This document shows, piece by piece, positions 2,151 through 60,921 of a stretch of 64,000 bases of DNA (the first letter of the stretch is position 1; each line of letters starts with the position of its first letter). A program made the position numbers and the translations under genes. This DNA is from Podarcis erhardii (Eukaryota), in the NCBI GenBank assembly GCA_964252035.1, contig OZ176206.1; one strand, given 5' to 3'. The notes below the pieces were generated by a model, which was given only the letters and a program-made list of their open reading frames with translations, had not been told where the DNA came from and did not search any database.

Positions 2151-3509
2151 TATGCAAGCTTATAAGAGAGGTTAAAAGCTCATTTTGCTTCATGTTTTCC
2201 CGGCGTGGAAAGGGCTTTTAAGCTCTTTGCCTTTCTTAGGAGAAAAGACCTACTCTGCATGTGAGTTCAGGGATGCTCTTGCGAGATCTCAGACTGTGTG
2301 AGTTCCCATGGGAACTGCTGGCACCAGGTGTCTTATTGTACCAGGTATTCCCAGCACAGAAAGAGCTTTTAAGCTGTCTGCCTTGCTTGCTGGACAAGGC
2401 CCTGTTAGTGTGCCGGCTCCAGAAGGCAAGGGGTGTTTACGTGGTGGTGGTTACAAGGGGGCAGTTTGAGTATGCACATTTTTCTGTATACGTATATTCT
2501 GTATATATGTATATTCTGTATATTTCTATATGCCCCCTTGGAACTAGACCTGCACATAAGATGCACTCATACTGTAGTGAGTTCATGGTTAGAACTTGGG
2601 TCTCTCTGCTCCAATTCCAGTACTATATGCATCCAGCAAACTATGCATCAAGAGAAACCTTTCCTTCCAAAATGCCTATGTCTTTACAGAAGACAAAGAA
2701 GCGACCTTAGTTTTGTGCAGCTTAATGATGTATTTTACCAGCCAAGCAGGTCTATTGTTATTTCCTAAGAGGTTCCCTTTCAGCTTGCGCTGAATGTGTT
2801 CATTTAAGCTGCAATTGCGCTTTTTATACATTATTCTTGGGCCCCATTATTTTGCTTTTTGAGAAGAACAAGCCATTCTACTTCCCTGTTCTCTTGATGA
2901 TAGATTTTAAGGCTCCTGCCCTGTTCAAGAATGAATAGCGACATGAATTTGATGACTGTTTCTGGGATATAACTTATTGAATTGCAGTCATAGGAAATTC
3001 TGCTTACCCAGGAAAAACCCACAATATGCGCTCAGCTTGGAAGCAGGTTTTAAGTGACTTGGATTGTTAAAATTATTATTGAGGTACAGGGAAGGACGGC
3101 TTCATTGGTAGACTGGTAAAGTTTCATAGCAATTTTGCATGCTGGTAATTTTTTTTTTCATTCAGTGGGCATATGACTCAAGCACCAGGGCTGTGCACCA
3201 TAATTATGCCAAGAAGGGTTTATTTGCAGCCGTATTTCTGCCCTGCATGTAAGAGTACCAAGAAGAAAATCAGGCCTTAAAAGTTCTGAGAATACAGCTT
3301 AAGGGAGCATACACGTGTTTAAGTTGTTGCAGAAAATATGAAAAGTATAGAGGTAGATTCAGGCCCCTCCTCCTATCCTAAAAGCCCCACCTTGATTGAT
3401 TGTAAACAGCTTGATGCCATGCATGTTTCCTTCAAAGAAAAGGTTCAATGAGACTTGCGGAGATGAAGAGCTTGTGAATCTTAAAGCACTGCAGAAAGCC
3501 ATTGGTTAG

Positions 3510-3610
3510 TAGACTATAATCAAAGTGTCAGAAAGGATTTCAAGGGCCATCTAGTCCACCCCCTGCGAATGTAAACAATCTGCAGCTGCCGGTAGATGGC
3601 CATTTCGGTC
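3510..3610 (-). mobile_element. CR1 LINE 3' end fragment
   Basis: Reverse complement reads ATGGCCATCT..GCAGGGGGTGGACTAGATGGCCCTTGAAATCCTTTCTGAC, a CR1 3' UTR. Confidence 0.7.
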
Positions 3611-4997
3611 CTGTTCTGGGCTTGTCACATTCAGTGCTGCCTCTGCTCTGCCATAATTCAGCTTTCACTAAAACCCGTGTTGTTCATCTTGCGATCCACT
3701 ATGACTGAAACTCACTAAATTAATTATGTAATCAATAATATAATTGATTTCATGGCATCTCCATGGAAGAAAAACATTAAAAACAATGCCAAAAAACCCC
3801 ACCTATTTAAGGAGCATTTGCAGACTAAAGAAACGATAGCAAATACTATTTTGCATTCGTTACCATGATTTCCATTCCTAACCTCCAACAAACATGCAAA
3901 TTGCAGCATTTTCCACTCCCATTTTCATTTCTAATGGAATTCTCCAACATCCCTAGTGGCCATCAAAAATAGAAAGAACCACCTTCTGTCAGCCTATTTG
4001 CTGCATCTATAATGCAATTTGCAAAAGCAAGCCTGCCCTACACTAGTAGCATAAGGGTCTTACACCATACTTAAGATGCTTCCAATATTTAATAATGTAT
4101 TTATATATAAACCACCCTTCCCCCTCAGGAGCCCAGGATGCTCTTCCCCTCCTATATGATCCTCACAACTATCCTAAAGACGGTGACTTGCCTAAACAGC
4201 ACCTAGTGCATGGGCAGCCAATCTGGTGCCCTCTATGTGGGCTGCAAAACCAACTTGGGCAGATTCACCCATCCCTCTGGGTGGATGTTCACCACTAATG
4301 TTTGTAATTATTTGGTCCAGATTACAGATTTGTCCAACTCTTATGTTCCAGTGTATTATGAATCAAGCATTTATTCCCCACAAAGTACTTCTCTGGCTTG
4401 AACTTTTCAAAAACATGTTTCTGCAAAATATGCCAGCAATGACTTTTCAGGTGTCCCTTAAGATTTCATTTATTTATTGTCCAAGACCTGGACATGAAGT
4501 ACAGTCGTTGCTCATACACAGCTGTGAAAAAGCCTTCTAAAGCTTATATATCTTCATGCTCCAGGGAAATGTGCTCAGCTCTCTAACTCCCAAGGCTCAG
4601 AAGTCTTTCCTGATCTGTGTCCTGTATCAGTAGTTCAGGAAGTGCACAGTTCCCTGGAGAAAGAGAAAGAGAAAGAGAAAGAGATGCATCTGGGACAGAT
4701 CAGGGGTCTGTTTCACCTGCAATTACTGTCCAGAACTTAGGCAACTCTCTCTCTCTCTCTCCTCCTCCTCCCATATCCCTGTATATTTTCATTGGAAAAT
4801 TGAGGTGTTTCAGCAACAACAAGGAGAGCAAAATGAGTCTCACAACACTACACAGCTGGAGATAGCTCTCAGAAAAGATGTGAACTTTTGGCTCTTAATC
4901 ACCAAGCAAATTCCAAATTTATCTGAGTGGTTTCCACCCATCACAGGTTGAACTGTGTTGTCAGGGCAGATGCTGAGAAGGGCATATGTGTTTCTTT

Positions 4998-5154
4998 TAG
5001 CTCAGTGATAGAGTCCATACCTTGTGAGCAAAAGCTCCCAGATCCAATCCCCAAGATCTCCAGACGAGGCTGAAAAAGTCCCCTGCCTGAAACCATGGAG
5101 AGCAGCTGCCAGTCAGTGTAGACAATACTGAGCTAGATGGACCTCTAGTCTGAC
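4998..5154 (+). mobile_element. Squamate tRNA-derived SINE (CCTATGTT-tail family)
   Basis: A-box TAGCTCAGTGATAGAG, degenerate B-box, body CCTGCCTGAAACC.TGGAGAGC.GCTGCCAGTCAGTGTAGACAATACTGAGCTAGATGGACC. Confidence 0.85.
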
Positions 5155-7331: not shown

Positions 7332-7487
7332 AGGGCTGTAGCTGAGTGGAAGAGCATATGATTTGCAAGCAAAAGATTGCAGGTTCAATCCCTGCCATCT
7401 CCAGGTTGGGCTGAGAAGCCCTAGAGAACCACTGCCCCTTATTGTTGACAATATTATCCAGATTGACCAATGCTCTGACTCAGTATA
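7332..7487 (+). mobile_element. Squamate tRNA-derived SINE (CCTATGTT-tail family)
   Basis: GGGCTGTAGCTGAGTGG..AGAGCA..GGTTCAATCCCTGCCATCTCCAGGT..CTGACTCAGTATA. Confidence 0.8.
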
Positions 7488-7929: not shown

Positions 7930-8103
7930 TAACTCCATGGGAGAGCATCTAGCTTTGTAAGCAGGAGATCCCAAGTTCGATCCCTGGCATCTCCAGGTAG
8001 GGCTGGGAGAGATCCCTTGTCAAAAACCTGGGGGAGCCCTGCCAGTCAGTGTAAACAGTACTGGGCTAGATGGGACAATAGTATAAGGCAGCTTCCTACA
8101 TTC
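7930..8103 (+). mobile_element. Squamate tRNA-derived SINE (CCTATGTT-tail family)
   Basis: B-box AGTTCGATCCC, body CCAGTCAGTGTAAACAGTACTGGGCTAGATGG, tail TATAAGGCAGCTTCCTACATTC. Confidence 0.85.
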
Positions 8104-9479
8104 AAGTCCTGATTTCAGTCCTGCTATGTTTGTGTATCCGTACTTGGGGTAAAATGCTTTGGCAGCCTTTTTCTCAGATACTTGAAAGAGTCTAGGCAGA
8201 AACACTTGGAGGGGCTGTGAGTGACTTCTGCTATATGTACTGTAGCTTGATTCCCCCTTGCTGACTGCAGCCAATTTCCATCCTCATCACAATCTGTAAA
8301 TGTGCAAATCTAGCTTTTCACGAAAAGTTCTGGTGCTGACTTCCTCTGAAAGACACCAACATTGGCAATTGTGCAGTGAACTTCCAGCAGCTTGACAGAA
8401 ATTATTCAGCAGAGGGAGGGGGGGAGTATTTTCACACATCAACATAGTTTCTTTGTCTAAAACAAAACAAAACAAAAATCAATAGCAATTCTTGCTGCTG
8501 AACCAACAGGGGGAATATCTGTTTACAGTCCTTACTGCCTCATAACTCTTGGATTTGATTCTACCTGGTCCATGGAGGGAAACTTTAACACTTAGCCAGC
8601 CGACGGAGTCACTCCTGAGGGTTCTGCTCTCTTAAAGGCTGTAGCCATATCAGAATTAGAAAAGGGAACCGATGTAACTCCACACCCATCGATTAAACCG
8701 AGGATGGAGCACTGGTGTATTTTCACTGGGAGAAAGTGGGCAGGAGAGATTCCCCTGTGGTTGAGGCTAGGGAACTATGTATGAGTTTATGTATCGGTGT
8801 ATATGCCATCAGAATCACTTAAGAATGCATTTCCCCTATTTGCCATTTTTAAATGATTTTAAATATATATTTATATTATATAAAATATATTTATTGTTCC
8901 TAATAATATGCAGAGATGATTAGTAGAATGTTATACAACACTGCAATAATGTACAGTTATATTGAATAGCCTATGAATTCTAAAAAATGCAAGTTTAATA
9001 TTTTATTAAAAAGCCACATCTTCAGTCATTTAAATATATTTCAATATTAATCTTCTTCTTCATCATCATTTCCCAAGTTATTTTACTATTTCATCTACAT
9101 TCCCTACTATTAGACTCCCCCCAGCAGAGACTATGGGTTCACTGAGTCTTGTTCTTTGTTGTGCCAATGTAAAATAAACAAACTCATTTTTTTTTTAACT
9201 ACAACCCCCCCCCCCATTGTTCCCCTATGTGTGTTGCTAAATTTTCTCTTGCTGATTTCACTCCCCATACGGTGATGACATGGCTAGGTGGCAGAGCATA
9301 TGCTTTACCTGCAGAAAGTCCCCAGTGCAATCCTTGGCATCTCTGGTTTACAAAAGGGAGCATGGAGTAGGTGATCATGAGGGCAGGATTTGGGAGGGGG
9401 GACTCCTGCATGAGAGCGTGGAGAGCAAGGGTGGGTGAACCTGCCAATTGTGGTCTGCATGCCCAGGCGTCTCCCCACC

Positions 9480-13312: not shown

Positions 13313-13764
13313 CACCCTCCTTGAACAAATGATTAAAATGAACACCCATCAACACTCACCCACCCCCCAGTCCTCAAATCAGTCATTAACCCACCCTACG
13401 TGCACTTAGGTTGTCAAAAGGTACTTGCCTTCTGCCTCCAGAACATGCTATTAGGGCAGCCTCAGCCACCTTATCCTCCAAGTTTGCCCTTCAAATATTG
13501 ATTTGCCTTCGTTGCTCACACCTTAATTACATTGATCTCGTTTGCACATACTTGTCATTCAAACTGCTTAGCAATTAGAGGAGGGTGACTAAGGAAGGTA
13601 TTCATTTACATGCAGCCAGGTAACGCTTTTATTTAATAAAGTTTTCAATCTTCGAATGTGTTTTAATATGGCATTGCATGCTTTCCCCTTCAAATTGTAT
13701 GTTGCTTTGAGGCCAAAAAAAAAGAAATAAAAACGCAGCAAGCAACTATAAATAAATAAAGTAA

Positions 13765-14245
13765 GTAAGGTCTATTCATGGAGGAGAGGTCCATTGATGC
13801 CTATTAGCCAAAATGCCTATGCTCTGACTCCACAGTTAGAGGCAGCCATGGTTCCAAATACCGTACCTGTTGCTGGAAACCACTGGAGGAGAGAGCGCTC
13901 TTGTGGTCAAATCCTGCTTGCAGGTTTCCCACAAACATCTGGTTTGTCAGTGTGAGAATGGGATGCTGGACTAGATAGGCCATTGAACCGATCTAGCAGC
14001 CTCTTCTTCATGTGTTGTTAATGTTCTTGTGTTCTTAAGGTAGATGTAATCTGTCTCCCAGCCTCATCTCTGTCTCCCAGCCTTTGAATACCAATTGCTG
14101 GAGAATAGCGTGGGAGAGGGGGAAATTGGGACCATGCCCTGATTGTGGGCTTCTGATTGGCATCTGCTTGGCCACAGTGTGAAATAAGGTGCTGGGCTAG
14201 ATAGGCTTTTGTTCTGATCCAGCAGGCAACAAAAGAAGTGCCCTG
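13765..14245 (+). mobile_element. Two adjacent CR1 3'-end fragments (CTTATGTT-tail subfamily)
   Basis: 13765-14015 and 14090-14245 each contain (A)TACC.GTTGCTGG..CTGCTTG..CA.TGTGA.AA..GG.TGCTGG.CTAGAT.GG..CTGATC.AGCAG. Confidence 0.75.
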
Positions 14246-23774: not shown

Positions 23775-24097
23775 GAAAAATTCCCAATCTTAAATTCAGT
23801 TCACACTTCCACATCAGTTTGTGGGTTTTTCTTAAGTCCTCATGAAAATCCATAAGCATTTTAATGCAAATTATGCCCGATATACATTTTTAAATATGCA
23901 CATTTGCCCAATGCATTTTTGCATGTTATTTTCATTAATGTATTCTGTTTTATGTACACTTTTCCCCAATATATACATTTTTGTATACAATTCACCATTA
24001 GAGAGGTGTATTGCAAAATTCAAGTAAGTAAGAAATTTAAAGGATTTTTGGTTCTTCTATTGTTTTGGAAAGTGCATAATTAGGAAGCTTTGCCTTT
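23775..24097 (-). mobile_element. AT-rich non-autonomous DNA transposon copy, abutted by a SINE
   Basis: CCACATCAGTTTG..TCCTCATGAAAATCC..GCATTTT..TTGTTTTGGAAAGTGCATAATTAGG.AGCTTTGCCTT, as in 9652-10032. Confidence 0.65.
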
Positions 24098-24233
24098 TAG
24101 CTCAGTTGGTAGACCATGAGACTCTTAATCTTAAGGTTGTGGGTTCAAGCCCTACATTGGGCAAAAGATTCCTGCATTGCAGGGGGTAGGACTAGATGAC
24201 CCTCGAGGTTCCTTCCAACTCTACAATTCTATG
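24098..24233 (+). mobile_element. SINE with tRNA-Lys(CTT)-derived head and CR1 3' tail
   Basis: TAGCTCAGTTGGTAGACCATGAGACTCTTAATCTTAAGGTTGTGGGTTCAAGCCCTACATTGGGC follows tRNA-Lys-CTT (CTT at 24124-24126). It is followed by GATTCCTGCATTGCAGGGGGT.GGACTAGATGACCCTC..CCTTCCAACTCTACAATTCTATG. Confidence 0.9.
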
Positions 24234-25404
24234 TGTGCTAACTGGTTGCACAACCATCTTTAACGGTTGCACAACAATCTCTGGTAATGTCTTCTCTCAT
24301 GCAACAATGTTCCACCAGCCGAAGTCTACCACTTAGTGAATGGATAGGCCCCTATTTATTTCTCCGCAATGTCCACTTCAGCGCCAGTCTCCTCTCTGAA
24401 GGCTTTTGGAGCCTTTAGGTCTGGCTTTTGAAAGCTTTGGCTGGCTTTTCTCTTGGACATAAATCCTTGCTTGTAATGCCCTCTTGGAACACAGGATGGG
24501 CATCCTAGGACTTCCTGTTCCACTCTCATTTTCTTCAGGTCCATCCAATCAAGTCTGAGTGGTTTTGAGTTATTTCGGCCAAAGACATCTGGCCTTTTCA
24601 CTTTTATTACCTTGTTGGTCCCTCTTTGGGCCTTCGTATTGGCAAGGGCACACACTGATCCCATCACAGGAACAGTCTCCCCAGCATGGAGCCTGCAATT
24701 TCACTTTTGTCTCCTTGCTTCTGAGGCCACATCAAGCTTCTTGAGAGGAAGTGTGTTTTTCTGCCACAGACAGGGATAAATACTGCTTTCTCTCGGCCCT
24801 CATCTGTGATCTCAGCTGTTAGTAAACAGTGGCCCATCTTTCTACAAGTCCTATTTTTCTTCATTATACTCCTTGATTTCCTGACAAGACACTTTTGTTA
24901 CGTTTCCTCATGTTGCCTTTCTATATACTGGCCCCCTTTGGATAATATAAACCACACTCCTACTCACTGTTACTCCAGACCAAAGAATATGTAGTGTCAT
25001 TACTGGAAAGAGCACCAAAGAGAAATGAAAAATAACAAGAAAGAAATGCCCAAGGGTGCTCCAGTCCATAATAATAGGGGTTTCTAAATTTATATCTATA
25101 ACAGTTACTTGATTGCATAAAAAGGGACATGAGCAAAAGTCTTTTTTCCCTTCCATGCATGGTTCCTGACCATATTTTTGCACTACAGATCATATTCTGC
25201 ACATCATGCTTTCCAGTCTGTGCATATTTTTCATGTCCTTCCAGCTGGGGATTGCTTCTTCCTTTCATAATGAAGAGCTGCTGGTTTGTTTTGAACAGCA
25301 GGGAGTTTTCTAGAAGAAAATATGAGCTCAGCTTCATTCCCAGGCATTTGATTAATAGCAGGAGGCCAGGTTTTCAACAGATATCCAACTCTATAGGTTA
25401 CTTA

Positions 25405-33888: not shown

Positions 33889-34581
33889 GGTTCTTAGTTA
33901 CAGGGCCTGGCTTGTGTTGGCACCTCTCATGAAAGAATGCACACAGAAGGTTTCAGCTTCATTCTCCAACATCTCCAGCTAAAGGAGAAAATAGCAGACC
34001 TTGGGAAAGACCCGCATCTGAAACCGCAGTGAGGCACCGCTAGCTAGAACAAGCAATCCTGAGTTAGAGGGAGCTGCGTTCTGGCTCCGTATGAGGCTGC
34101 TTCATATATTCAACTCAGTCCCTTTCTCTGCTTCTTTTAGAACAGCCTGTCTCATATCAGCCAGCCACTGCCTATTTCAGCATTGCCCCTTGGGGATTCC
34201 TAATCGGTCCCTCTTCTCCCTTGTTTAATTACTTCAGTGTGATAGACTTGCTTTAAAATACGACGGCGTCTCTTGTCCAAGTTTGCACTTATGTAAGAGG
34301 CGTGTGAAGGGCGACTGTGGAAAGGAAAATGCTCCAGCAGCTCCACAGTCATGGTTCTGCACATTACTCACACAGCGATACATCACCCCTGTGAGCCCTC
34401 TGGCCAGGCTGCCTCCAGGGTGCCAGCTTAGGCACCTTATTTAATTGCAAGTCGAGTGATTTAAAGCCGACTTTCCCCTCAGGATCAAAATGAGAAAGCT
34501 TTGGTTTTCTCTGGAAAAAAGACGAAAGAGAGAAGGAGGAAAGCATCTACCCCCCCCCCCGCCTACATAGCTGTTAGGGAT

Positions 34582-34583
<2 letters not shown>

Positions 34584-34629
<46 letters not shown>
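34584..34629. repeat. (AT)23 microsatellite
   Basis: Perfect run. Confidence 0.98.
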
Positions 34630-34632
<3 letters not shown>

Positions 34633-34854
34633 TGTCTATATCGGCATATATGTGAATGACTGCAAATCATGCCTCAAAGGCTTCGCAACTGGGGAGCAAA
34701 TGAGGGAAGGGCAGAGAGGCAAATGTTTTATTTCTAAAGCAAATAATATTTATTCATTTGAGAAGCCATTCGTTTGCCTTCAGGGGTTGGGAATCCTGGG
34801 TTTTACCTTCGTTTATATTGCTTGAAATGTTTGCCTGTTGTAGAGACAGGGGAT

Positions 34855-35025
34855 TAGGACATCAGAAGGAACTTGCTGGAGACCCATCTAGCATCCTGTT
34901 CTGACAGACCAGATGCCTCCAAGGGAAGCCTGCAAGTAGGATCTGAGTACAAGACCACTCTTCCTTCTTTGGATTCCTAGCAACTGGTATTCAGACACAC
35001 ACTGCCTCTCACACTGAAGGTAGTA
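34855..35025 (-). mobile_element. CR1 3' end (CTTATGTT-tail subfamily)
   Basis: CCCATCTAGCATCCTGTTCT..CCAGATGCCTC..AGCAACTGGTATTCAGA..CTGCCTCT. Confidence 0.75.
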
Positions 35026-35308
35026 TTCTCCTTGAATTTGGCCAATCCTCTAAGAACACTGGCATAGGAACGTTGATTGGCAGGAACTACGGTGTGGGCT
35101 AGCTCTGTGTTTCCCACCCTGGTCAAACCACCTGGCCGAAAGAGTTCTGGCAGCTTGGGACGTGTCTCCGTGAAGAGGCCCACCTCTCGTTTTGAGAAGC
35201 AAATCTGCAAATCGTAATTAAAAGAAGCAGCAGCACAATGCGATGCCCCAAACTTGACTCCAGTGGAAAAAGCAAGCATTAGATCTGAAGGCCATTTGCT
35301 GCTGCAAT

Positions 35309-35385
35309 GAATCATAGAATCGTAGAAATGCAGAGTTGGAAGGGACCCAAAGCACCATCTAGTCTAACCCCCTGCAATGAGATCA
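35309..35385 (-). mobile_element. CR1 tail fragment
   Basis: GAATCATAGAATCGTAGA..GAGTTGGAAGGGACCC..CATCTAGTC.AACCCCCTGCAATG. Confidence 0.8.
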
Positions 35386-36313
35386 TTTACAGCCATGTCA
35401 TGATGGGGTTTCTGGCCTGAAGCATGACATTCCAGTGGCTCCAGGCCCAGTTGTGGCTGAAGGATGAAGTTTCTCCTCCCATGCCCTTTAATTTCTCAGC
35501 ATCGCCATGATTTGGAGGAGGACCAGGCAAACAGCTGCTTCTGTTGCTGACCTTCAATGAGTGCTCACTTCGCCAGGCTCAGCAGCTCAAAAGTGGGGTT
35601 GGAAATGGCACTTTGCTTGGAAGAATCAGTTGTGGATCCTCTCCAGCCTTGTGGGCAAAAGGTGGACACTGACCAAATGCAATGGCACTTAGTTTCACAC
35701 CATTTGCCTGTTATTTTCATTGATGTACTGGATGCCAAACTTCAGCTGATTAACAAATTGCCCTTATCCAGCAAGGTAAAATGACTAGACCATCATTCAC
35801 AAAATCATGATTGATGCACGTTCTTAAAATACATACAAACTGAAATTTCTCACCAATAATTTCCCTTCACTCTTGCCATCCTCTTTCTGCATTTTAGATT
35901 GCAACCTCCTGGGGCAGGGACCTGTCGGGGGCTTTTTTGGTTCTGAACTGCTGTTAAGCACCTAATACCTTGGTGAAGCTGTATACATAAACAGTAAACA
36001 GATAAAGGTGCTGATCCGAGGCATACGTAAATGAAAATGAATTCCTTAAAAATGACAATCCATTCATATACATTAATGTGTTTCTGACTGGAGTGGCAGA
36101 AATTATGAAAGCTTCCCCAACATTTTGTTAACAGTATTTTCCCCATTACATTCTCAAATCTATCTTATAAAGGCTAAAAAGTTGTGATTCTAAGGCTATA
36201 GCCACTTATCTGGGATGAATCTACATATTTCAGAGTACACACATACAGGATTTAAAGACTTTGAAGTAGATCCTACAGTAAACCACACCAGATTCTTACA
36301 ACAGTTTTCAAAA

Positions 36314-36450
36314 GGGTAACATGTTAGCCTGCTGCAGCCAAAACAATACAGGATCTTATGACACCTTAAACATTAACTGATTTATTGAGTCCATGAAAGT
36401 TTATGCCACAATAAACCTGCAACTCTTTATAGCGCTATAAGTTTTGCTGC
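36314..36450. mobile_element. Degenerate Penelope-type terminal (pLTR) element with inverted halves
   Basis: GGGTAACATGTTAGCCTG..GCAGCCAAAAC..CACCTTAAA..TTTATTG, then GTCCATGAAAGTTTATGCCACAATAAA..GTTTTGCTGC, so the arms are mutually inverted. Confidence 0.6.
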
Positions 36451-36524
36451 TTGGGGAAGACTCTTCACTGCCTATTGATCTACTGTTGAATTTGCTTTAG
36501 AGGTAGTCAACATAAAAAGAAGCC

Positions 36525-36965
36525 TGCAGCTGGATCAGGCCAAAGCTGATCTAGTCCAGAATCATGTTCTCACAGTCACCAACCAGATCATGGAATCGTA
36601 GAGTTGGAAGGGCCCCCAAGGGTCATCTAGTACAACTCTCTTCAATGTAGGAATCTCAACACAAAGTCCCCCATCCAGTTTGAAACCATACTGGACCCTG
36701 CTTAGCTTTGCAAATGTGCCAGCAGTTTTTCTGCTGCCCACAAGTAGGACCTATGTGCAATAGCACACATTTCATTTATGATTCCCACCAACTGGTGTTT
36801 GGAGACCTGCTACCTCTGACAGTGGAGGGAGAACATAGTCATCATGGCAAGTGGCCATTAATAGCATTATCCTCCATGAAATTTATCTATTCCTCCTTTA
36901 AAGCATCCAAGCTGCTGGTCATCACTACATCTCATGAGAGTGAACGCCAGAGCTTAACTATGCAC
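36525..36965 (-). mobile_element. CR1 3' region interrupted by a SINE at 36587-36708
   Basis: Left part GCTGGATCAGGCCAAA..ATCTAGTCCAG..CTCACAGT..AACCAGAT. It resumes after 36708 with GCCCACAAGTAGGACCT..CCAACTGGTGTT..ATCCTCCATGAA..TTTAAAGCATCCAAG. Confidence 0.75.
36587..36708 (-). mobile_element. 5S rRNA-headed (SINE3-type) element with CR1 3' tail
   Basis: The reverse complement of 36666-36708 (AAGCTAAGCAGGGTCCAGTATGGTTTCAAACTGGATGGGGGAC) aligns ungapped at 33/43 to vertebrate 5S rRNA nt 49-91. It is followed by GAGATTCCTACATTG..ACTAGATGACCCTT..CCCTTCCAACTCTACGATTCCATGAT. Confidence 0.8.
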
Positions 36966-37719
36966 CATGAGAACAAGCCACTTTGCATCCTGAGTGAGAA
37001 CCATCCATGAAATCTCTATGCTGAAGTCTCTGTAGTTGCCTGAATTGCTCTGTGCATTTCTCCAGCAAGCCTCTTTCATAACACTCCCATCACAGCTCTT
37101 GATGAACAACATTCATCCAGTGATTATCATGGGGAACTTGCATTATGAAATGGTAATGCCAGGAAGCATCCTTCGGTATTCAAGCTGAAATTCAAAGCAG
37201 AGGTCTCCTTGATTCTTGAAAGCAAACATCATTGAGATGCATGTGGGTCTCCTGCTCCTCCTAAAGAACCCATCCCCCGATCAAGGTTGGCTTGCTATCC
37301 AGAGGACATTTAATATCCAGCTCAAGGCAAGCAGACCTCTGGCCAGAAATGACATACTAAGGATATTATGACTGACATCCAGATGCAAAGCAACCTGATT
37401 GAGAAGGCAGCACTCTTGCTTTGCCAGCTCCACTTCCATATGAAAAGTGGATGCATTGAGCTGTAATTGCATAGGTGCGGGTAGATGAATAGAATGTTAA
37501 TGGGCTGAGGCTGAGGGTGGGTGGGTGGAATACAAAGCTGCTGCTACAGAAAGCAGGCATTCAAATGCAGTAGAGCAAGAGGATCTCAGGAAGGCGCAGC
37601 TGTGACGGGGCTCTGCAAACACTCATGTTCCACGTTTCCGTCAGGGAAATATGTGCGCAACCGGTGCTTCCGAGGGAGAGGTGGCCTGTGGTAAATGACA
37701 GGATAGCGCTTGCTGGAGA

Positions 37720-38155
37720 AACTGGATAGAGAAAATTTTTCTCCCTCTCCTGTAATGCTAGAACTCAAGGCTGTCCAATGGAGGTGAACGTTGGGAGATT
37801 CAGGGCAGGCAAAAGGAAGAACTTGGTCACACGGTTAAACGTTGGACTTGGCCACCACAAGATGCAGTGATGGCCATTATCATAGATGGCTTTAAAATTC
37901 ATGGAGGATTAGGCTATCAAAGGCTTCAAGTCCAGGTGTCCTTTGCATGGTATGGAGAACGTAGCTAGAGAAGAGGTTCTTCTCTCTCTCCCATAATGCT
38001 AGAATTTTGGACATCCAACAGAGCTGAATGTTGCAAAGTTCAGGACAGATAAAAAAAGTACTTATCCACACAATGCATAATTCCCACAAGAGATAGTGAT
38101 CGCCCCCAACTTGGATCACTTTAAGAGGGTGATCCATGCAGTATCCTGCTTCCAA
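37720..38155 (+). mobile_element. Two tandem diverged CR1 ORF2-end fragments
   Basis: 37720-37930 and 37965-38155 both begin GAGAA..TTCTC.CTCTCC..TAATGCTAGAA..(G)GCTG/CATCCAA..GAA.GTTG..AG.TTCAGG.CAG..AAAA..AAG.ACTT..CACAC. Confidence 0.7.
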
Positions 38156-38213
38156 ACCATTTAGGGCTTTATAATAACCAGCACCTTAATTTGTGCCTAG
38201 AAGGGAACTATAA

Positions 38214-38387
38214 TAGAGCTACCATAAATCCAGAATTTTCTGGACATTCAGCCATCGAGTGGAAATTGCTGAAATGTCTGGGAAAATCCGGACATTTGAC
38301 AACCCATGTTGGAAGTGTAGATTTCCTTAAAAATAGCTCAAAAACTTTTGTGTCCAGATTTTCGCTTCTTGAAATAAGGTGACCCTA
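38214..38387. mobile_element. hAT (Blackjack-like) MITE
   Basis: TAGAGCTACCATA...ATAAGGTGACCCTA, with internal TCCGGACATTTG / TGTCCAG motifs. Confidence 0.6.
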
Positions 38388-39864
38388 ACTAAAAGTCAGT
38401 GTAACTTGCACACAACACTTGGAATAAATGTACTGTGATTAGTGTTACTTGCAGGTGTTTCGCAACCCGCTTGTGCCTGTGCTCACACACAGGGTGTGTA
38501 TATTTTTTCCCCATTTGCAATCCAAAACAGGCACAAAATCAGGAGGTTTTTTTCAAGCCCCTAGGGAGTGGCTGTATGCGATTGGTGGGCAGTTTTGTAG
38601 TTCACAAGGTGTTCTATTCCCTGCTATCATGATGATGACAGTAATGTATTTTAATGTTAACTGGGCTCTGTCGATTAATCAAAATAAGACACCAGCTTTG
38701 CCCTCATACTTACAATCTTTGAGCCAAACTAGACATGACACACAGTCCTGTCTCTCTTTCCCCAGACAGTTATTATATATACTGTATACGAGAAAAGCAG
38801 CCTTGGAGGCTGCAGTGAGGACCAGAAAAGCAGCAGGTGGAAAAAGAGGCTGCTTAACATAGGAACAAAAGAAGATGCCATGTATTGAGTCAACCCATTG
38901 GTCCTTCTAGCTTAGTTTGTCAAGGGCAGTTTTATTCCTCTCTCCAAGTTATGGTTGTGGCCATTCAGTGGGGATTAATTCTATGATATCAATTTTTGTG
39001 TCGTGTGTTGTGTGACTGGATCTGTTTGGAGCGAGGGCATAAACCAGGAAATGGCCTTTCCTCCCCAAGAGATAGGAAACTGCTCCTCTTCCCCAAGAGG
39101 GGGCCCTTACAGGGTTCTTAACAAAATGTGTGTCTTAAACTTGTGCATTAAACATCCTTTGTCCCTGGAGAGTTGTGTAGTGGATGAATAATGCCTGTCC
39201 CAAAGTGAGATATAGACTAAGCACTGGTTTAATCACACACATTAATCTCACACCTAGCCCATGTTCAGCAGCTCAGATAAATGACTCACAGCAGATTAAA
39301 CTTGCAGATAAGCAGGTAGATGAAGATGGGTTTACCTGGTCTTTGCCCCCACCATGAGATCGTATTTTGTAGCTCGGCCTCCTCCCCCCAACCTGATACC
39401 CTCCAGAACAGCCAGCACAGCTGGAAATATGAATGTCAGTCTTATCTCGGCAGATTTTTTCTAATACCAATCTCGCCCTTTAAGCTAGGAGAGAAGCAAG
39501 CCCCCCCCCCACTTTCTGGTTCTGCTAAAAATACAGACAGTTCTTGTTTATTATAGGTATAATATTAAATACAAATACACTCCATGTTTGCTAAAGGAAC
39601 CAGCATATAAACAGATGCATACAACAATGCATATCACTGTAGAAAAATGTGTAGGTATGAATATATGTATAAAATTATGCCGTAAGAATATACTGCTGCC
39701 TGGGGTATGACTATTTTACACATATAATACACTTTTTCAGATAGTTTTGCATACAGTTAGTTGGTTTTTAAAAAACCTGCATGAGTGGCGTTCATACGTA
39801 GGCGCTCAATGCAAGGGGCAGGACAATGCAAGCAAAACTCATTCAAGTCAGAACCACCCAATCT

Positions 39865-40040
39865 GTTTTTAAAGGATGGCCTCCAACTTGGATGGCTTCA
39901 GAAGACAAATTAATCGCGAAGACTATTGGTGGCTACTAGCCATGGTGGCTATGCTTTGTCTCCACCATCAGAGGCAGTAATGGGCTTCCCCAAGTAACTT
40001 GGTTGGCCGCTGTGAGAACAGGATGCTGGACTAGATGGGC
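39865..40040 (+). mobile_element. Internally deleted CR1 3' fragment
   Basis: GGCCTCCAACTTGGATGGCTT..GGCTACTAGCCATG..GAGGCAGTA..TTGGCCGCTGTGAGAACAGGATGCTGGACTAGATGGGCC. Confidence 0.75.
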
Positions 40041-40707
40041 CAAATCGCTCATTAAAAGTCTCCTAAATCCCCATGTTGCTCCCAAGACAAGCCAAAGTTT
40101 GCTTTCATGCAATCAGAGCTGGAACCTTGTTCTTTGAAACAGCCCTCTGCGCTAGAGAGGTTTGGTACTATACTGGCAAAAATTGTCTAAGTTGCTTGGT
40201 CCTAAGTGGGTGATAAGGGCAGTTATACAGCATGTACTTTTTCAAGCCTTGAACCCCGTGATATTTGTTTTAAAATATACTCCTGGCAATGAAGGCTCTT
40301 TGCCTGCATTTTCAAAGCTACTCTCTCTTGCTTATGAAGTCCGGCCTCGTTATGAGCCTCACAGGGATGGCATATCAGTAGATGAGTTAGTAAGAAGACA
40401 GTGCAAAATTCATTTCTATTAAAGCTTTCCCACCCCCACTCTGTGGCAAGCCCTTAAGCCTCCCTGTTGCTTCAGCATTCCAAATTAGGGTCTGAAAGCA
40501 ATTCAAGGGGGGAAAGATTTTAATCTGAATTCTACATTGTGAGATAATCAGCGGTTAAAGTGCTGAAAGAGCGATATTGAGGCTGATGTTCCCTCCTCAC
40601 CCCAACTAAACTTTCCTTTTCTTTTTTGCATCTTAGTGTTTCATCACACCCTGCTGATGCCAGATAGAGGGGCTGTTTATTTTTTTATTTTTTTGGAGTG
40701 GGTAGGA

Positions 40708-41044: not shown

Positions 41045-41345
41045 GCCCCCGACCTGAAATCCCAAAGAGCTGCTGCCAGGCCGCGTAGACAATACTAGGT
41101 TGGATGGACCAAGGTCTCTCCTACTTGAATGGGAGACCATTGCCTTTAGTTGCTTGCCGAAAGAGTCACGGCTCAGTGATAGAGCATCTGCTCTGTGTGG
41201 AGATGGTCCCAGGTTCAATCCCTGACATGTCCAGGTAGGACCGATGAAGACACCTGCCTGAAACCTTGGAGAGCTACTACTAGTCAGTGTAGGAATTAAA
41301 CGTTGTGAAGGAGCTGAGGAACCCTTCCAGCTCTATGATTCTATG
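41045..41345 (+). mobile_element. Cluster of SINE fragments (two tRNA-SINE pieces and a CR1 tail)
   Basis: 41045-41125 SINE body; 41165-41293 GGCTCAGTGATAGAGCATCTGCT..CCCAGGTTCAATCCCTG; 41310-41345 CCCTTCCAGCTCTATGATTCTATG. Confidence 0.75.
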
Positions 41346-44040: not shown

Positions 44041-47000
44041 TCACAGAGACTCTTCAAAACCAACAAGCGTTGTCTATACATCACATATGCTTTTCAGATA
44101 ATCTGTAAATTTTCCCCAGTCCTCGATAAACTTTTGGTCTTTCTGATATCGAATCTTCCCAGTCAATTTATCCAGTTCCGCATATTCAGTCAGTTTCATT
44201 CTCCATTCTTCCACACTTGGAATTTATTCCTGCTTCCATCTTTGCGCCAGAAGTATTCTTGCAGCTGTTACAGCGTATTGGAAAAGTTTACAATCTTTTC
44301 TATTAATTTCATTACCTACCAATCCTAGTAAAAAGGCTTCTGGTTTTCTAACAAATGTATATCTCAACATCTTTTTCAATTCCTTATATATCATTTCCCA
44401 GAAGCCTTTCACCTTTTTGCATTCCCACCACATATGATAGAAAGTTCCTTCTTTTTCTTTACATTTCCAACACTTGTTACATGTTTTATACATTTTAGCT
44501 AATTTAACTGGCGTTATGTACCATCTATATACCATTTTCATTACATTTTCCTTCAACGCGGTACACGCCGTAAATTTTAACCTTTCATTCCATAATTTCG
44601 TCCAATCATCATATTGTATATTATAACCAAAGTCTCTAGCCCAGTGTATCATTACTGATTTCACCTCTTCATCTTTTGTATGCCATTCCAACAACATTCT
44701 ATACATTTTAGACAAATTTTTATACTCATTATTCAATACCTCTATTTGAAATTTTGATTCTTTTCCTTCATATCCACACATTTTACAGTCTTTTTTAAAC
44801 ATTTCACTAATCTGGTAGTAGTGCAACCAATCATAAACAAATTCTTTCACCTCTTCATAAGTCTTCATTTTCCATTCCCCCCCCCTCTCTTACTATCAAT
44901 TCTCCATAAGTTATCTACATCCCCCTCATGTTTATCTTTTTCACACTCATCACTTCCAATGGTGAAAGCCAATGGGGGAATCTTGGTTCCAACAAATTTT
45001 TATACCTCTCCCACACATCTATCAATGATCTTCAGAAGATGTGGTTTTCAAAGCCTTTATGAATTTTTTTCTTTTCATACCACAGATATGCACGCCACCC
45101 GAATCTATTATCAAATCCTTCTAAATCTAACAACTCTCCATTCACTAATTTAATCCATTCCTTTAACCAACAGAGGCATGATGCTTCATAATATAGTTTC
45201 AAGTCTGGCAGGGCGAAGCCACCTCTTTCTCTCGCATCTGTTAATAACTTAAACTGAATCCTTGGTTTCTTGCCCTGCCAGATGTATCTTGAAACCATTT
45301 TTTGCCATTCTTTGAAAATTGATGCCCCTTTAATTATCGGAAGTGATTGGAATAGAAATAACATCCTTGGCAGCACACTCATCTTTATCGTAGATATCCT
45401 TCCCCAAAAAGATAGCTTCAATCTTCCCCACACCTCCAGATCCCTTTTTATCCTATTCCAAACAGGTACATAATTATTTTGAAACAAATCAATATTCTTG
45501 GGGGTTAACCATACTCCTAAATATTTCACTTTGTTCACCACTTCCAGCCCTGTACTTTGTTGCATTTCCTCTATTAATTCTTGGTCCATATTTTTCGCAA
45601 TAATTTTTGTCTTTCTTTTGTTTAAATAAAAACCTGCAACTTGACCAAATTGTTCTATTTCTTCTAAAATCCTTTAAACACTTCCCGCTAGCTCTTCTAT
45701 CATCATTACAAGATCGTCCGCAAATGCTTTGACTTTATACTCATTTTTCCCTACAGACACCCCTTTTATTTCTTCATTTTTTCTTATTGATTTTAGCAAA
45801 ACCTCCAGCACCAAGATGAATAATAATGGTGATAATGGGCATCCTTGTCTTGTACCCTTTGTTATTTTGATGTCTTCCGTTGTATAATTGTTTACTATCA
45901 ACTTCGCTTTTTGCTCTGTATATATTGCCTTTATTCCATTAAAAAATTCCGTACCTACGTCCATATGTTCCAAATTTTTTAACATAAAATTCCATGATAT
46001 ATTGCCAAAGGCCTTTTCCGCATCCACAAAGATTAACATGGCTTGTTTCTCATTCCTGGCATTCAGATATTCTATTATATTTCTTATATTTCTTATATTA
46101 TCTTTCATCTGTCTGCCAGGAAGGAAACCCGCCTGATCCTTATGTATAAGAGCTTGTAGTACTTTTTTCATTCTCTTTGCTAATATTCTTGCAAAGATTT
46201 TGTAGTCAGTGTTCAACAGCGAAATAGGCCTATAATTTTTAACTTGCATTAAGTCCGATTCTTGTTTTGGGATAAGTGTAATAAAGGCTTCTTTCCAAGT
46301 TTCCGGTATTTCTCTATTCTTCAAGATATTGTTTACAACTTCTTTCAGTGGTACAAGTAGGGTACTTCTCATTTCCTTATAGTATCTAGCTGTGAATCCA
46401 TCTGGTCCTGGGGCTTTCCCCTTTTTCAATTCGTTTATCGCCTCTTTAATTTCTTCAATTTCAATTGGGGCATTCAAGTTGTCTTTTTTCTCCGTCGGGA
46501 TCTTCTGCACTTCTTTTTCCTTTAAGAATCTTTCTATCTTCCTCATATTATTCTTTTCTTTGTTTTTATACAGTTGTCTATAAAAGTCCAGGAATCCTTT
46601 TCTAATTTCTTTCGGGTCTTCTATTTCCGTACCTTCAATGATGATTTTGTTTACTGTATTCTGCTCTTTTCTTTTCTTTTCTTTTCTTTATCTGCCACGC
46701 CAGCCATTTTCCTGATTTATTCGCGAATTCAAAATTTCTTTGTTTCATTCTTTTTATATTCCCTTCTACTTCCTTATTTATTATCATTGCAAACTGTGTT
46801 TGTAAGATCTTTATGTTTTGTCTTATCTTTTCGTTATTTGGGTTTTTTTTATCAATTTTTGTTCATTCTCCATTATTTGTCTCAATAATTCCTTTTTGTT
46901 CTTTTCCCTATTTTTATTTTTCAGGGCATTTTGTTGAATGAAAAAGCCCCTCATCACAGCTTTGCTGGCGTCCCAGACCATACTCATTTTTGTTCCCTTA

Positions 47001-47917
47001 TTGCAGTTATTTACAAAATATTCCGACAGGTTCTTTTGAGCATTTTCTACTACTTTCTGATTGTCTAGAAGATAGTCGTTTATTCTCCATCTAAACGTTC
47101 TTTCTTCAAAACCTTTTAGTTCAAATTTTATTGCACTATGGTCCGAAATCACTCTTGGTTGAATTTCAATTTTTGAGATTCTTGGAGTTAATTCATTTGA
47201 GACCCACACCTGGTCTATTCTTGACATGGATTGGTTTGGTTCTGAATAAAGCGTGAATTGTTTCTCCAGTGGGTGTCTAAGTCTCCAAATGTCAATCAGA
47301 TTACAATTCTTAGTCATTGAGAAAAAAGTCTTAGGTAATTTCCCATCTTTGCTCACCCCTGTTGTTCTCAGTCTGTCCATTTCCATTGTCACCACTCCGT
47401 TCAGGTCTCCCATTATTATAATTTTCTGATCCATATATTCGAACAGTCTTTCTTCTAAATTTTTATAAAATTCTGTCTTGTTTCCATTTGGTGCATAGAT
47501 CCCGACAATTATTATTTTTTCTCCTTGCCGCTTAATTTGAACTGCCATAACTTCTTCATCTTTAAAAATTTGTTGAGCTTCATTTTTTTTCTGATGTACA
47601 AAACTACTCCTCTTTTTTTACTCCTATCCGAAGATATAAATTCATTTCCCAGTCTTTTATTAATTAAAATTTTTTTATGTCTTCTTGCCACGTTAGTTTC
47701 TTGTAGACAAATGATATCCAAATTCAAAACAAAATGACAAATGATATCCAAATTCAAAACAAAATGGTCAAAAGTTTTGACCATGGCAGACCAACACGGC
47801 TACCTATCTGTAACTGATATCCAAATTCTTCTTTTTTAAATGTTGTTCGACTTTCATTTTTTTATCGTTAATCCCATTAATATTCCAAGTCCATAACTTT
47901 AGCTCCGTTTTCGCCAT
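44041..47917 (-). pseudogene. L1 ORF2 (APE endonuclease and reverse transcriptase), broken
   Basis: ATG at 47917 (MAKTELKLWTWNINGIN). EN motifs DIICLQET, GDLN and SDH; RT motifs KAPGPDGF, YRPISLLN, GTRQGCPLSPLLF and FADD; C-terminal CWKC..HMWWEC. Several stops and frameshifts plus a 103-bp insertion. The end is extrapolated through two premature stops. Confidence 0.92.
47726..47815 (+). mobile_element. Rearranged mini-Penelope insertion in the L1 endonuclease domain
   Basis: 47774-47814 GTTTTGACCATGGCAGACCAACACGGCTACCTATCTGTAAC resembles the lacertid Penelope pLTR end. The 13-bp target GATATCCAAATTC occurs at 47713, 47743 and 47816. Confidence 0.8.
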
Positions 47918-47939
47918 TTTGAATTCTTTATTACAAATT

Positions 47940-48897
47940 TTATAATTCGCCTACCTCTTCTTCTTCCCTCTTTCTTCCTTCCTCTAATTCATCCGGGTCC
48001 ACTCCTCCTGACGCCTCCATTCCTGGCTCCACTTCTCTTGTTTCTTCCTCATCACTTCACAGCTCTTTATATTTTCTTAGAAATTTTCCTATTTCTTCCG
48101 GGCTCGTAAGTCTATGTCTTTTACTTTTGTAAATAAAAGAGATTCCTTCCGGGTATTCCCATCTGAATTCTATATTATTCTTCCTTAAAATCTGAACTGT
48201 TGGTTTATATGGGTCTCTCTGTTTAAGTAACCTGATCGGGATGTCTTTAAAGATGATTATGTAGTTTCCTTCAATGTTCAACCTGTTCTCTCTATTTTTC
48301 TGGAGTATCAAATTTCTCATCTCTCTGTCCTTAAAGGTAATCAGGCAGTCCCCCGGAAATTTTCTTGCCTTAGCCGATCTTATCTTCATTCGAAAAGCAC
48401 TTTGCACCGATCTTGCCACCTCATCTACATTCATCTCCATCCATTGTGCAATCTCTTTTATTAACTTCTCTTTAATATTTTCTCCTTGCACCTCTGGAAC
48501 CATCCTCAATCTTAAATTCACTTCTCTCTGCCTGAGTTCGTTCATAGAAATCGCATCCCAGACTTCCTCTTGTGTTTTTTTAATTTCCAACATTCCCGTC
48601 CTTATTTTTTCTTCCTCCATCTTCACTTCCCTCATTTCCAATCTTGTCTTTTTCAACCCCTCTTCCAAATTCTGTGTCCTTTTACTCACATCCTTCAATT
48701 GCCCTTTTGTCCATTTGGCCCATTCTCTTATCCATTTGCTCTAATTTTGCTTCTATATTTTTTTCACTCTGCTTAATATTGGAATTGATCTCTGCAAACA
48801 TTTTCAAAATCTCTCCTTTAAAGTCCGCTTCTTGTTTTGATCCTCTCCTCTCTACCGGTGTTCCTCCCTCCCCCCCTTTCTTTTGTGTATGAGACAT
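47940..48897 (-). pseudogene. L1 ORF1 (coiled coil, RRM and CTD), broken
   Basis: MSHTQKK.. coiled coil, frameshift near 48700, NLRLRMVPE, IIIFKDIP..LKQR, FRWEYP. TGA at 48057 is followed in frame by a 38-aa acidic tail ending at TAA 47940-47942. Confidence 0.9.
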
Positions 48898-59428: not shown

Positions 59429-60775
59429 ATGGTTTTATACACTTCCCCATTTCCAAACGGCTTTCTGTCAGCACTGCACTCTTTCTCCTGGGGCTTGATC
59501 TTCCCATGTTATTGGCTTGGAGACAGGCTTATAGCCTCCTTTGTGCCTACCACCTATGAGAAGCGCCAAAGGGGAGATGATCCGTGCTACTTTCACGCTC
59601 TGTGCATCATCATCACCACTCCAATTTACCTGGCACTGCTGGTGGTCTCTCTGCCTTTTGCCCTGATTGGCTTCCTGCTCTGGTCCCCTCTCCAGTCTGC
59701 TAGGCGACCGTACGTCTACTCTAGGCTGCAAGACAAGAGCCAGATCCATGGAAGCACGTTGCTCACGGAGTGGAAGGCCGCCAGCAACGGGAAAAGCTTC
59801 TGCTTTGGCAGCGCCAATGTCTGCCTGCTCCCAGACTCCTTGGCAAGATTGAACAATGTTTTCAACACACAGGCCCGTGCTAAGGAGGTTGGGCGACGGA
59901 TACGGAATGGGGCTAGCAGGCCACAGATCAAAATCTACATCGATTCCCCCACAAACACGTCCATCAGCGCAGCAAGCTTCAGCAGCCTGGTCTCTCCTCA
60001 GGGCGGAGATAGTAATAACCGCGCAGTCAATGTGGGCATCAAGAGGACAACCTCGATGGAGTACAAAGGGGACAACTCCGGCTTGAACAACAGCGAAGAT
60101 GGTAGAGATGGCAAAGCTGGAGGAGATACCAATGAGGGCGAAGATGGCAACACGTGCATTGTGCGCATAGGTGGAGAGGACAATGGGCACATTTCAGACC
60201 TGGAAGCAGATGGCACTGGTGGCCAAGTCAATAACAGCAAGGGGCCAGCAGACCGATCACCAGAATCTGAAGCCGAGAGCCTGAAAGGACAGACTCCGAA
60301 CCATAAGCAGAAAGAGGGGGATTCTGGGAGCCTAGATAGCTACACTGCCTCGCGAGAGTCCCTAGTGAAGGTGCGTGCCGCAGACGGCCCTGTGGACCAG
60401 AGCACTGTCAACAGCAAGCTCCTTTACAAGGCCTCACTGATGAAGAAGACCTCCTTGAGAAAAAAGAGAAACACAGATGAGCTCTTTGACCACGAGATCT
60501 CCGCTTTCTTCCCTGCCAATTTGGACTTCCTGTGCTTGCAGGAAGTGTTTGACAAAAGGGCGGCTGAGAAATTGAAAGAGGAGCTCCACCATTACTTTGA
60601 ATACATTCTGTACGATGTTGGGGTCTACAGCTGCCACGGCTGCTGTACCTTTAAGTTTGTGAACAGTGGCCTGCTTTTTGCCAGCCGCTATCCAGTTATG
60701 GATGCTGCTTATCACTGTTATCCCAATGGAAAAGGAACAGACGCCTTGTCTTCTAAGGGGGCCCTGTTTCTCAAG
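59429..60775 (+). CDS. SMPD3: Neutral sphingomyelinase 2, first coding exon (449 codons; gene continues beyond the window)
   Basis: MVLYTSPFPN..two hydrophobic segments..GSANVCLLPDSLAR (N130), calcineurin motif PQIKIY, IDS(173)P, disordered insert, LDFLCLQEVFD, GCC..NSGL.FASRYP, SKGALFLK. Ends at the donor AAG|GTAGGT (phase 0), at the same protein position as the mammalian exon boundary. Confidence 0.97.
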
Positions 60776-60921
60776 GTAGGTCTCTTTCTATATAAACTGA
60801 TTCAGGGACCTTCTGGTCTGCAAGCAGGACAAGTGCATATATGTGTGTGTACTTTGCATGTCTAGGCCACTATGCAAATACAAAATTTGTGGTGTGCAAT
60901 AAAGAACACCCTGCTTCATTG

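What the first reader, a model, noticed from the sequence alone, without database searches (positions are those of the whole stretch)
36587..36708. 5S rRNA-headed SINE on a CR1 tail: third head of a modular SINE system
Seen: ungapped 33/43 match to 5S rRNA nt 49-91, covering box A, the intermediate element and most of box C of the type-1 Pol III promoter. It is joined to the same CR1 tail carried by the tRNA-Lys (24098) and tRNA-Ile (673) SINEs, and is nested in an older CR1. Known: 5S-derived SINEs are rare; the lizard example I recall (5S-Sauria in Anolis) uses a Sauria/Bov-B body, not CR1. Inference: one CR1 partner repeatedly captured different Pol III heads, including a type-1 promoter, in this lineage. 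This may be an undescribed SINE3 family or a one-off template-switch chimera.
Basis: partly seen in the sequence, partly recalled or inferred. Interest (0 to 1): 0.72.

Follow-up and report, generated by a model that had tools for sequence, protein, structure and literature searches.

The report
5S-headed, CR1-tailed lizard SINE copy
This is an old copy of a multi-copy lizard "jumping" element that joins the promoter part of the 5S ribosomal RNA gene to the tail of a CR1 retrotransposon; the design is already known from other vertebrates, so it is real but fairly ordinary.

Summary
On the minus strand, 36708-36663 matches 5S rRNA nt 49-94 at 33/46 ungapped (33/43 for nt 49-91). The next best match in the window is 25 and the best shuffle is 28. 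It abuts a CR1-type 3' tail (36662-36587) that is the same module as in the tRNA-Lys SINE at 24091-24236.

It is not a one-off chimera. Contigs of four congeneric lizards, probably Podarcis, hold many separate copies that span the same head-tail junction at 81-86% identity. The letters most copies carry move this copy towards 5S (36-38/46).

The unit is longer than reported, about 36587-36737. The extra 29 nt at its 5' end are not 5S-like. The insertion lies in an older repeat and is shared by at least three sister species, so it is old.

My reading is a SINE3-type element: a 5S promoter-derived head mobilised through a CR1 tail. Published reviews say vertebrate SINE3 families are normally CR1-mobilised, so the design is known. 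At most this is a new, short family without a Deu domain, in lacertid lizards. I could not query Dfam or Repbase, and the true 5' end of the family and Pol III transcription remain untested.

The scan noted the same CR1 tail on three tRNA heads elsewhere in this genome (s1-232493). It holds no other note of a 5S head.

The parts
36709..36737 (-). 5' leader of the repeated unit. It contains a GCAGCAG...CUGCUGG hairpin. By eye it matches 5S nt 20-48 at only 8/29.
   Evidence: Contig pieces of other copies align contiguously up to 36729-36737. At 36730, 92% of the laid depth (98 contigs in X15) shares one alternative letter, so this stretch is family sequence and not flank. The 8/29 count is by eye against the canonical vertebrate 5S sequence from my own knowledge.
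36663..36708 (-). Segment derived from the 5S rRNA internal control region (5S nt 49-94). Box A lies at 36707-36693, the intermediate element at 36690-36685, and box C from 36677 downward.
   Evidence: 33/46 ungapped, against a next best of 25 in the window and a shuffle maximum of 28. Family-majority letters at 36692, 36678, 36664 and 36665, and the 25% variant at 36669, all change towards 5S, giving 36-38/46.
36587..36662 (-). CR1-type 3' tail: GATTCCT.CATTG...CTAGATGACCC...CCTTCCAACTCTAC, ending in one octamer ATTCCATG (36596-36589).
   Evidence: 68 nt at 82% to the tail of the tRNA-Lys SINE (I4). It aligns with two CR1 3' ends in the window. Other copies continue with (ATTCTATG)n, as shown by the loose-end consensus. 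This is the most repeated part of the stretch.
36738..36900 (-). Upstream half of the older host repeat into which the element inserted.
   Evidence: Uninterrupted copies lie at 13740-14040 and 39983-40042. Depth falls to single-copy level at 36740-36773.
36470..36586 (-). Downstream half of the same host repeat (TGGTTGGTGACTGTGAGAAC...CTGGACTAGAT...).
   Evidence: Alignment A1 with the uninterrupted copies and repeat family D17. About 14-18 nt of the host repeat are missing at the insertion site, and there is no clear target-site duplication.
24091..24236 (+). Sister SINE: a tRNA-Lys(CTT) head on the same CR1 tail module.
   Evidence: ARAGORN, Rfam tRNA at 41.2 bits, tail identity (I4) and alignment A2.

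Best explanation
Window 36587-36737 (minus strand) is an old, inactive copy of a multi-copy SINE of lacertid lizards (probably Podarcis). Its head derives from the internal control region of the 5S rRNA gene, the part bound by TFIIIA (box A, intermediate element, box C). This head is fused almost directly to the last ~75 nt of a CR1 LINE. Inferred mechanism: source copies were transcribed by RNA polymerase III from the internal promoter, the CR1 reverse transcriptase recognised the shared 3' hairpin and octamer-repeat tail, and it copied the RNA into new sites by target-primed reverse transcription. Here the new site was an older repeat, and a small target deletion occurred. Shown: the sequence similarity, the repetition of the junction in four species, and the shared tail. 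Inferred: Pol III transcription, CR1 mobilisation, and where the full-length 5' end lies.
For: The 5S similarity is far beyond chance. It falls exactly on the 46-nt TFIIIA-binding probe quoted in PMC13345412. Every place in this segment where most or many other copies differ from this copy changes towards 5S, raising 33 to 36-38 of 46. Identity is concentrated in box A (14/15) and box C (up to 14/15), while the 73-79 spacer is only 2-3/7, as expected if the promoter was kept in source copies. The junction is repeated: 28 listed contig pieces from four species span 36587/36605 to 36716/36737 contiguously at 81-86% identity. Summed contig depth at the junction bin is roughly 550-990 times the single-copy flank, and at the head roughly 3,300-5,300 times; this is a rough proxy only. 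Several short contigs of 128-161 nt end within about 10 nt of both ends of the unit, which fits a defined short element. The tail equals that of the tRNA-Lys SINE (I4). Two CR1 3' ends in the window share only the terminal ~60 nt and not the head. Orthologous contigs of three sister species run into the element with 0-4 differences. By my own count the family meets the SINEBase working criteria quoted: at least 100 copies and at least 60% identity to 5S over 60 nt (about 63% for this copy, about 68-70% for the majority sequence).
Against: The Rfam 5S covariance model finds nothing, even on a 121-nt slice. Only 46 nt are 5S-like, and the 29 nt upstream are not. A canonical type-1 gene has 49 nt before box A, so either the copy is 5'-truncated or the promoter geometry is not canonical. 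No full-length copy, no transcript and no clear target-site duplication were seen. Contig depth is not a true copy number. The depth dip at 36655-36671 leaves open that many head-like sequences sit in another context. Dfam and Repbase could not be queried.
Confidence: 0.75

Rival explanations
1. The stretch is a 5'-truncated copy of a CR1 LINE subfamily whose 3' UTR happens to contain a 5S-like segment. It would then be a LINE fragment and not a SINE.
For: CR1 copies are mostly severely 5'-truncated. Alignments of other copies necessarily stop where this copy ends, so cannot show directly what lies upstream in them. No defined full-length 5' end was demonstrated.
Against: Depth rises again over the head (about 15k at the junction to about 80k at 36689-36722 in X15) instead of falling steadily away from the 3' end as in truncated LINEs. 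Short contigs of 128-161 nt end within a few nt of 36737. Two CR1 3' ends in the window have unrelated sequence upstream of the tail. The conservation pattern follows the 5S promoter boxes.
Confidence: 0.12
2. The head is not 5S-derived. It is a degenerate tRNA-like or unknown head that resembles 5S by chance or convergence. It contains box A-like TGGCACATTTG and box B-like GGTTTCAAAT motifs.
For: The Rfam 5S model is silent. The upstream 29 nt show no 5S similarity. Box A-like and box B-like motifs lie at roughly tRNA-like spacing (by eye).
Against: There is an exact 15-mer and 33/46 identity, against a shuffle maximum of 28. Family-majority letters move towards 5S at four of four places. ARAGORN and Rfam tRNA also find nothing here. 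SINEBase warns that box motifs alone are not proof.
Confidence: 0.08
3. The stretch is a one-off template-switch chimera: the CR1 reverse transcriptase jumped from a CR1 RNA to 5S rRNA during a single insertion.
For: Such chimeras are known for L1 in mammals (my own knowledge). Only one copy lies in this 64-kb window.
Against: Many separate contigs in four species carry the same junction. The 5S part is about 28% diverged from 5S, but the whole unit differs from the letters most copies carry at only about 7% of its positions, so the head had diverged before this copy was made.
Confidence: 0.02

Closest known systems
SINE3 / AmnSINE1 (5S rRNA-derived DeuSINEs of zebrafish, catfish and amniotes; Kapitonov & Jurka 2003; Nishihara 2006)
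   Same: A 5S-derived head with a type-1 promoter and a 3' tail shared with CR1-clade LINEs (PMC3747384 table; PMC7245038).
   Different: There is no room for a Deu domain or any body, because the 5S segment abuts the tail within about 10 nt. Only nt 49-94 of 5S are recognisable. The unit is about 150-160 nt. The tail is a squamate CR1 tail with ATTCTRTG repeats.
5S-Sauria (Anolis) and SINE-1_Pmo (python)
   Same: They are 5S-derived SINEs of squamate reptiles.
   Different: Those are 348 and 241 bp long and carry Bov-B/RTE-derived parts. Here the 3' part is a CR1 tail.
Tortoise Pol III/SINE (tRNA-Lys + PsCR1) and TguSINE1 (tRNA-Ile + CR1-X)
   Same: Short SINEs made of a Pol III head joined directly to a CR1 3' end. 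The window's own tRNA-Lys SINE at 24091-24236 is of this type and shares the tail module with the 5S element.
   Different: Their head is a tRNA (type-2 promoter), not 5S.
Head-swapped SINE pairs on one tail (HaSE1/HaSE3, CoeSINE4/CoeSINE5, Ped-1/Ped-2)
   Same: A tRNA head and a 5S head occur on the same LINE-derived 3' part within one genome.
   Different: Those use RTE/Bov-B partners, and this one uses CR1.

Membership tests
SINE3 (5S rRNA-derived SINE) | The head is derived from 5S rRNA (SINEBase: at least 60% identity over at least 60 nt) | tested here: met
   33/46 for this copy and 36-38/46 for the family-majority letters over nt 49-94. Extended to 60 nt by eye, this gives about 63% (copy) and about 68-70% (majority). 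The match rests on the 46-nt core. The Rfam 5S model is silent.
SINE3 (5S rRNA-derived SINE) | Complete type-1 internal promoter at the canonical distance (~50 nt) from the 5' end | tested here: inconclusive
   Box A is 14/15, the intermediate element 4/6 and box C 11-14/15. Only 29 nt shared among copies lie upstream of box A, and they are not 5S-like (by eye).
SINE3 (5S rRNA-derived SINE) | Interspersed, at least 100 copies, with a uniform chimeric structure among copies | tested here: met
   28 listed contig pieces from four species span the junction. Summed depth at the junction is about 550-990 times the single-copy flank, a rough proxy.
SINE3 (5S rRNA-derived SINE) | 3' tail shared with a partner LINE | tested here: met
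   The tail aligns with CR1 3' ends at 35310-35480 and 3500-3670 and with the tRNA-Lys SINE tail (I4 and I11). Other copies carry the (ATTCTATG)n terminal repeat. The exact partner subfamily was not identified.
SINE3 (5S rRNA-derived SINE) | Transcribed by RNA polymerase III | not testable with these tools
   No RNA run was laid.
DeuSINE (AmnSINE1 / zebrafish SINE3) | Central Deu domain between head and tail | tested here: not met
   The 5S-like segment ends at about 36663 and the CR1-like sequence starts by about 36660, leaving no space for a domain. I made no alignment to a Deu consensus because none was on hand.
5S-Sauria | Bov-B/RTE-derived 3' part, about 348 bp | tested here: not met
   The 3' part is a CR1-type tail and the unit is about 150 nt. 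The 5S-Sauria description comes from PMC5786205.
5S rRNA gene or pseudogene | Full-length match to the 5S covariance model | tested here: not met
   No RF00001 hit at E<=10 on 701-nt and 121-nt slices.

The most novel reading that the evidence does not exclude
This could be an uncatalogued lacertid SINE3 family that keeps only the TFIIIA-binding core of 5S behind a shortened, unrelated ~30-nt leader. It would belong to a head-swapping set (tRNA-Lys, tRNA-Ile, tRNA-Asn, 5S) that shares one ~72-nt CR1 module. Its promoter geometry would then be non-canonical. One possibility is a hybrid in which the mutated 5S spacer (GGTTTCAAAT) acts as a box B together with an upstream box A-like motif.
Probability: 0.2. 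Interest if true: 0.5.

Novelty: new member of a known kind. Interest (0 to 1): 0.35.

Why it matters
The finding adds a 5S-headed, CR1-mobilised SINE to squamates. In the papers I could read, the only 5S SINEs on record for squamates (5S-Sauria, SINE-1_Pmo) carry Bov-B/RTE parts. Together with the tRNA-headed SINEs on the same tail, it gives a compact natural example of head exchange on one LINE-recognition module. Its copies, shared among congeneric lizards, could serve as phylogenetic presence/absence markers. It does not change how we think SINEs work.

Tried and rejected
- Rfam at gathering threshold and in E-value mode on two slices gave no 5S hit.
- Exact-pattern scans for the head plus tail, or for the family-specific head, found nothing in viral contigs, metagenome contigs or prokaryote genome contigs.
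- I used the one open reading frame through the element as a protein query to fish other copies out of the protein collection. No candidate was found.
- I sampled Podarcis lilfordi DNA through a LINE protein. One 21-kb locus (L001) holds no copy, a second locus was withheld, and the window's own RT ORF is not on record. Further sampling was dropped because the expected yield was about one copy per 300 kb.
- An alternative parse puts the insert start at 36718 with a CTGG target duplication, and treats GGGCAGCAGAAAAACTGCTGG as host repeat. I rejected it because about 98 contigs share family sequence across 36719-36737, while the host repeat beside it is at single-copy depth. Similarity to the two uninterrupted host copies there is only 10/18 and 7/18 by eye.
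- RNA folding of the tail and of the whole unit was not more stable than shuffles.
- Literature searches for a lacertid or squamate 5S/CR1 SINE found none.
- One script call returned nothing and was rerun.

Full report
**What is there.** The element reads on the minus strand. From 5' to 3' it has three parts.
- A 29-nt leader at 36737-36709 that contains a small hairpin.
- A 46-nt stretch at 36708-36663 that resembles the 5S rRNA gene.
- A CR1-type tail at 36662-36587, which ends in ...CCTTCCAACTCTACGATTCCATGAT.

It sits inside an older interspersed repeat. Uninterrupted copies of that repeat lie at 13740-14040 and 39983-40042. About 14-18 nt of the host repeat are missing at the site, and there is no clear target-site duplication. 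Small target truncations are known for non-LTR insertions (PMC4494074).

**Is the 5S match real?** My reference was the 46-nt 5S rRNA oligonucleotide (nt 49-94) quoted as a TFIIIA gel-shift probe in PMC13345412.
- Across both strands of the window the mean is 11.2, the next best is 25, and the best of 60 shuffles is 28.
- The first 15 nt are an exact match that occurs once in the window.
- By 5S numbering, box A is 14/15, the intermediate element 4/6, box C (80-94) 11/15, and the 73-79 spacer only 2/7.
- The Rfam 5S model finds nothing. This is a promoter-sized fragment of 5S, not a 5S gene or pseudogene.
- By eye, the 29 nt upstream match 5S nt 20-48 at only 8/29, using the canonical sequence from my own knowledge.

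**Is it one chimera or a family?** The stretch 34500-39500 is held by runs of seven coded organisms. Organism F holds 0.92 of its words and is probably the source. I laid the contigs of four of them (F, G, A, D) on 36400-36900 at 80% likeness.
- In each species many separate contigs align contiguously from 36587-36605 to 36716-36737, so they cross the head-tail junction. Seven such pieces per species are listed, 127-145 nt long, with 18-27 differences and 0-6 gaps.
- Summed contig depth is single-copy in the flanks (15.7 in X15). It is about 15,500 at the junction bin, about 80,000 over the head and about 680,000 over the tail core.
- The tool warns that this depth is not a copy number. As a rough proxy it points to the order of 10^3 copies with the junction, with similar ratios in all four species.
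- The alignments and depth run to about 36737, and 92% of the depth at 36730 shares one alternative letter. The unit is therefore about 150 nt, not 122.
- Several short contigs (128-161 nt) end within about 10 nt of both ends of the unit. This fits a short element with defined ends better than a LINE 3' UTR.

**Independent support for a 5S origin.** In the 5S-like segment there are five places where many or most other copies differ from this copy:
- 36692: 51% of the laid depth carries the alternative letter.
- 36678: 72%.
- 36664: 57%.
- 36665: 44%.
- 36669: 25%.

Every one of these changes is towards the 5S letter, which raises the match to 36-38/46 and box C to 14/15. This copy differs from the letters most copies carry at about 11 of 151 places, while its head is about 28% from 5S. 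The head had therefore diverged within a SINE lineage before this copy was made, which argues against a fresh template switch onto 5S rRNA.

**Tail and sister elements.**
- The tail matches the tail of the tRNA-Lys(CTT) SINE at 24091-24236 over 68 nt at 82% (I4). In both SINEs the tail starts at about the same place, AGATTCCT.CATTG.
- Two CR1 3' ends in the window (35310-35480, 3500-3670) share only the last ~60 nt and have unrelated sequence upstream.
- Other tails in the genome continue with (ATTCTATG)n, as shown by the loose ends. This is the CR1 octamer repeat (my own knowledge).
- The 'tRNA-Ile' element at 673 is tRNA-like by eye, but ARAGORN and Rfam do not call it. Its tail is older and carries a deletion.
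- An earlier scan note (s1-232493) reports the same tail on Lys, Ile and Asn heads elsewhere in this genome. I confirmed only the Lys case here.

**Age and host.**
- Orthologous contigs of organisms G, D and A run into the element from the unique flanks: 36700-36842 with 0 differences, 36690-36900 with 4, and 36400-36608 with 3. The insertion therefore predates their split.
- Pairwise identity among copies is 81-86%, and I saw no sign of recent activity.
- An L1-type reverse transcriptase ORF in the window is closest to Podarcis muralis and P. lilfordi proteins, at 73-81% identity. The genome is therefore a lacertid lizard, probably Podarcis.

**Comparison with what is known.**
- Vertebrate SINE3 families are mobilised by the CR1 clade (PMC7245038).
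- SINE3/AmnSINE1 are listed with a 5S head and CR1 partners, the tortoise SINE with tRNA-Lys and CR1, and TguSINE1 with tRNA-Ile and CR1 (PMC3747384).
- tRNA and 5S heads on one tail are known for HaSE1/HaSE3, CoeSINE4/5 and Ped-1/2.
- The squamate 5S SINEs I found on record, 5S-Sauria and SINE-1_Pmo, carry Bov-B/RTE parts.
- The architecture is therefore known. What may be new is a short, body-less 5S/CR1 family in lacertids.
- I found no paper describing such a family. One lacertid genome paper notes that half of the repeats are unclassified. I could not query Dfam, Repbase or SINEBase.

**Open points.**
- The true 5' end of the family is unknown. A canonical 5S gene has 49 nt before box A, and here only 29 nt are shared among copies. 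Either this copy and many others are 5'-truncated, or the promoter geometry differs.
- Attempts to fetch other copies failed.
- Pol III transcription and the exact CR1 partner are inferred, not shown.

**Verdict.** Its kind is known, so interest is modest.

**Housekeeping.** The only human-derived letters I used were the 46-nt conserved 5S probe quoted from a paper.

Noticed in passing
window 44224-48698 (minus): A degraded L1-type LINE with endonuclease and reverse transcriptase ORFs. Its closest proteins are from Podarcis muralis and P. lilfordi (73-81% identity). It coincides with a strong GC and AT skew at 44-52 kb.
   Followed up: partly
window 24091-24236 (+): A well-preserved tRNA-Lys(CTT) head joined directly to the CR1 tail. 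It has the same design as the tortoise Pol III/SINE.
   Followed up: partly
window 5000-5121, 7341-7414, 7933-8006, 9283-9356, 41171-41292: Five copies of a different tRNA-derived SINE. One of them (7332-7403) passes the Rfam tRNA threshold. The body ...CAGTCAGTGTAGACAATACTGAGCTAGATGGACC follows the head.
   Followed up: no
window 13740-14040, 36470-36900, 39983-40042: An older interspersed repeat ending ...CTGTGAGAACAGGATGCTGGACTAGATGGGCC... It hosts the 5S element. Its depth suggests hundreds of copies in the genome. Its class was not determined.
   Followed up: partly
window 59429-60865 (+): A 478-aa ORF with a weak endonuclease match at its C-terminal end, probably the 5' part of another LINE.
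   Followed up: no
window 36675-36687 and 36710-36720 (minus): The diverged 5S spacer reads GGTTTCAAAY, which is box B-like. TGGCACATTTG, 34 nt upstream, is box A-like. The spacing is roughly tRNA-like. These are seen by eye only.
   Followed up: no
Look-up of encoding contigs look-up of P0025: The P. lilfordi locus on a 103-Mb record was returned as 'withheld' with no DNA.
   Followed up: no
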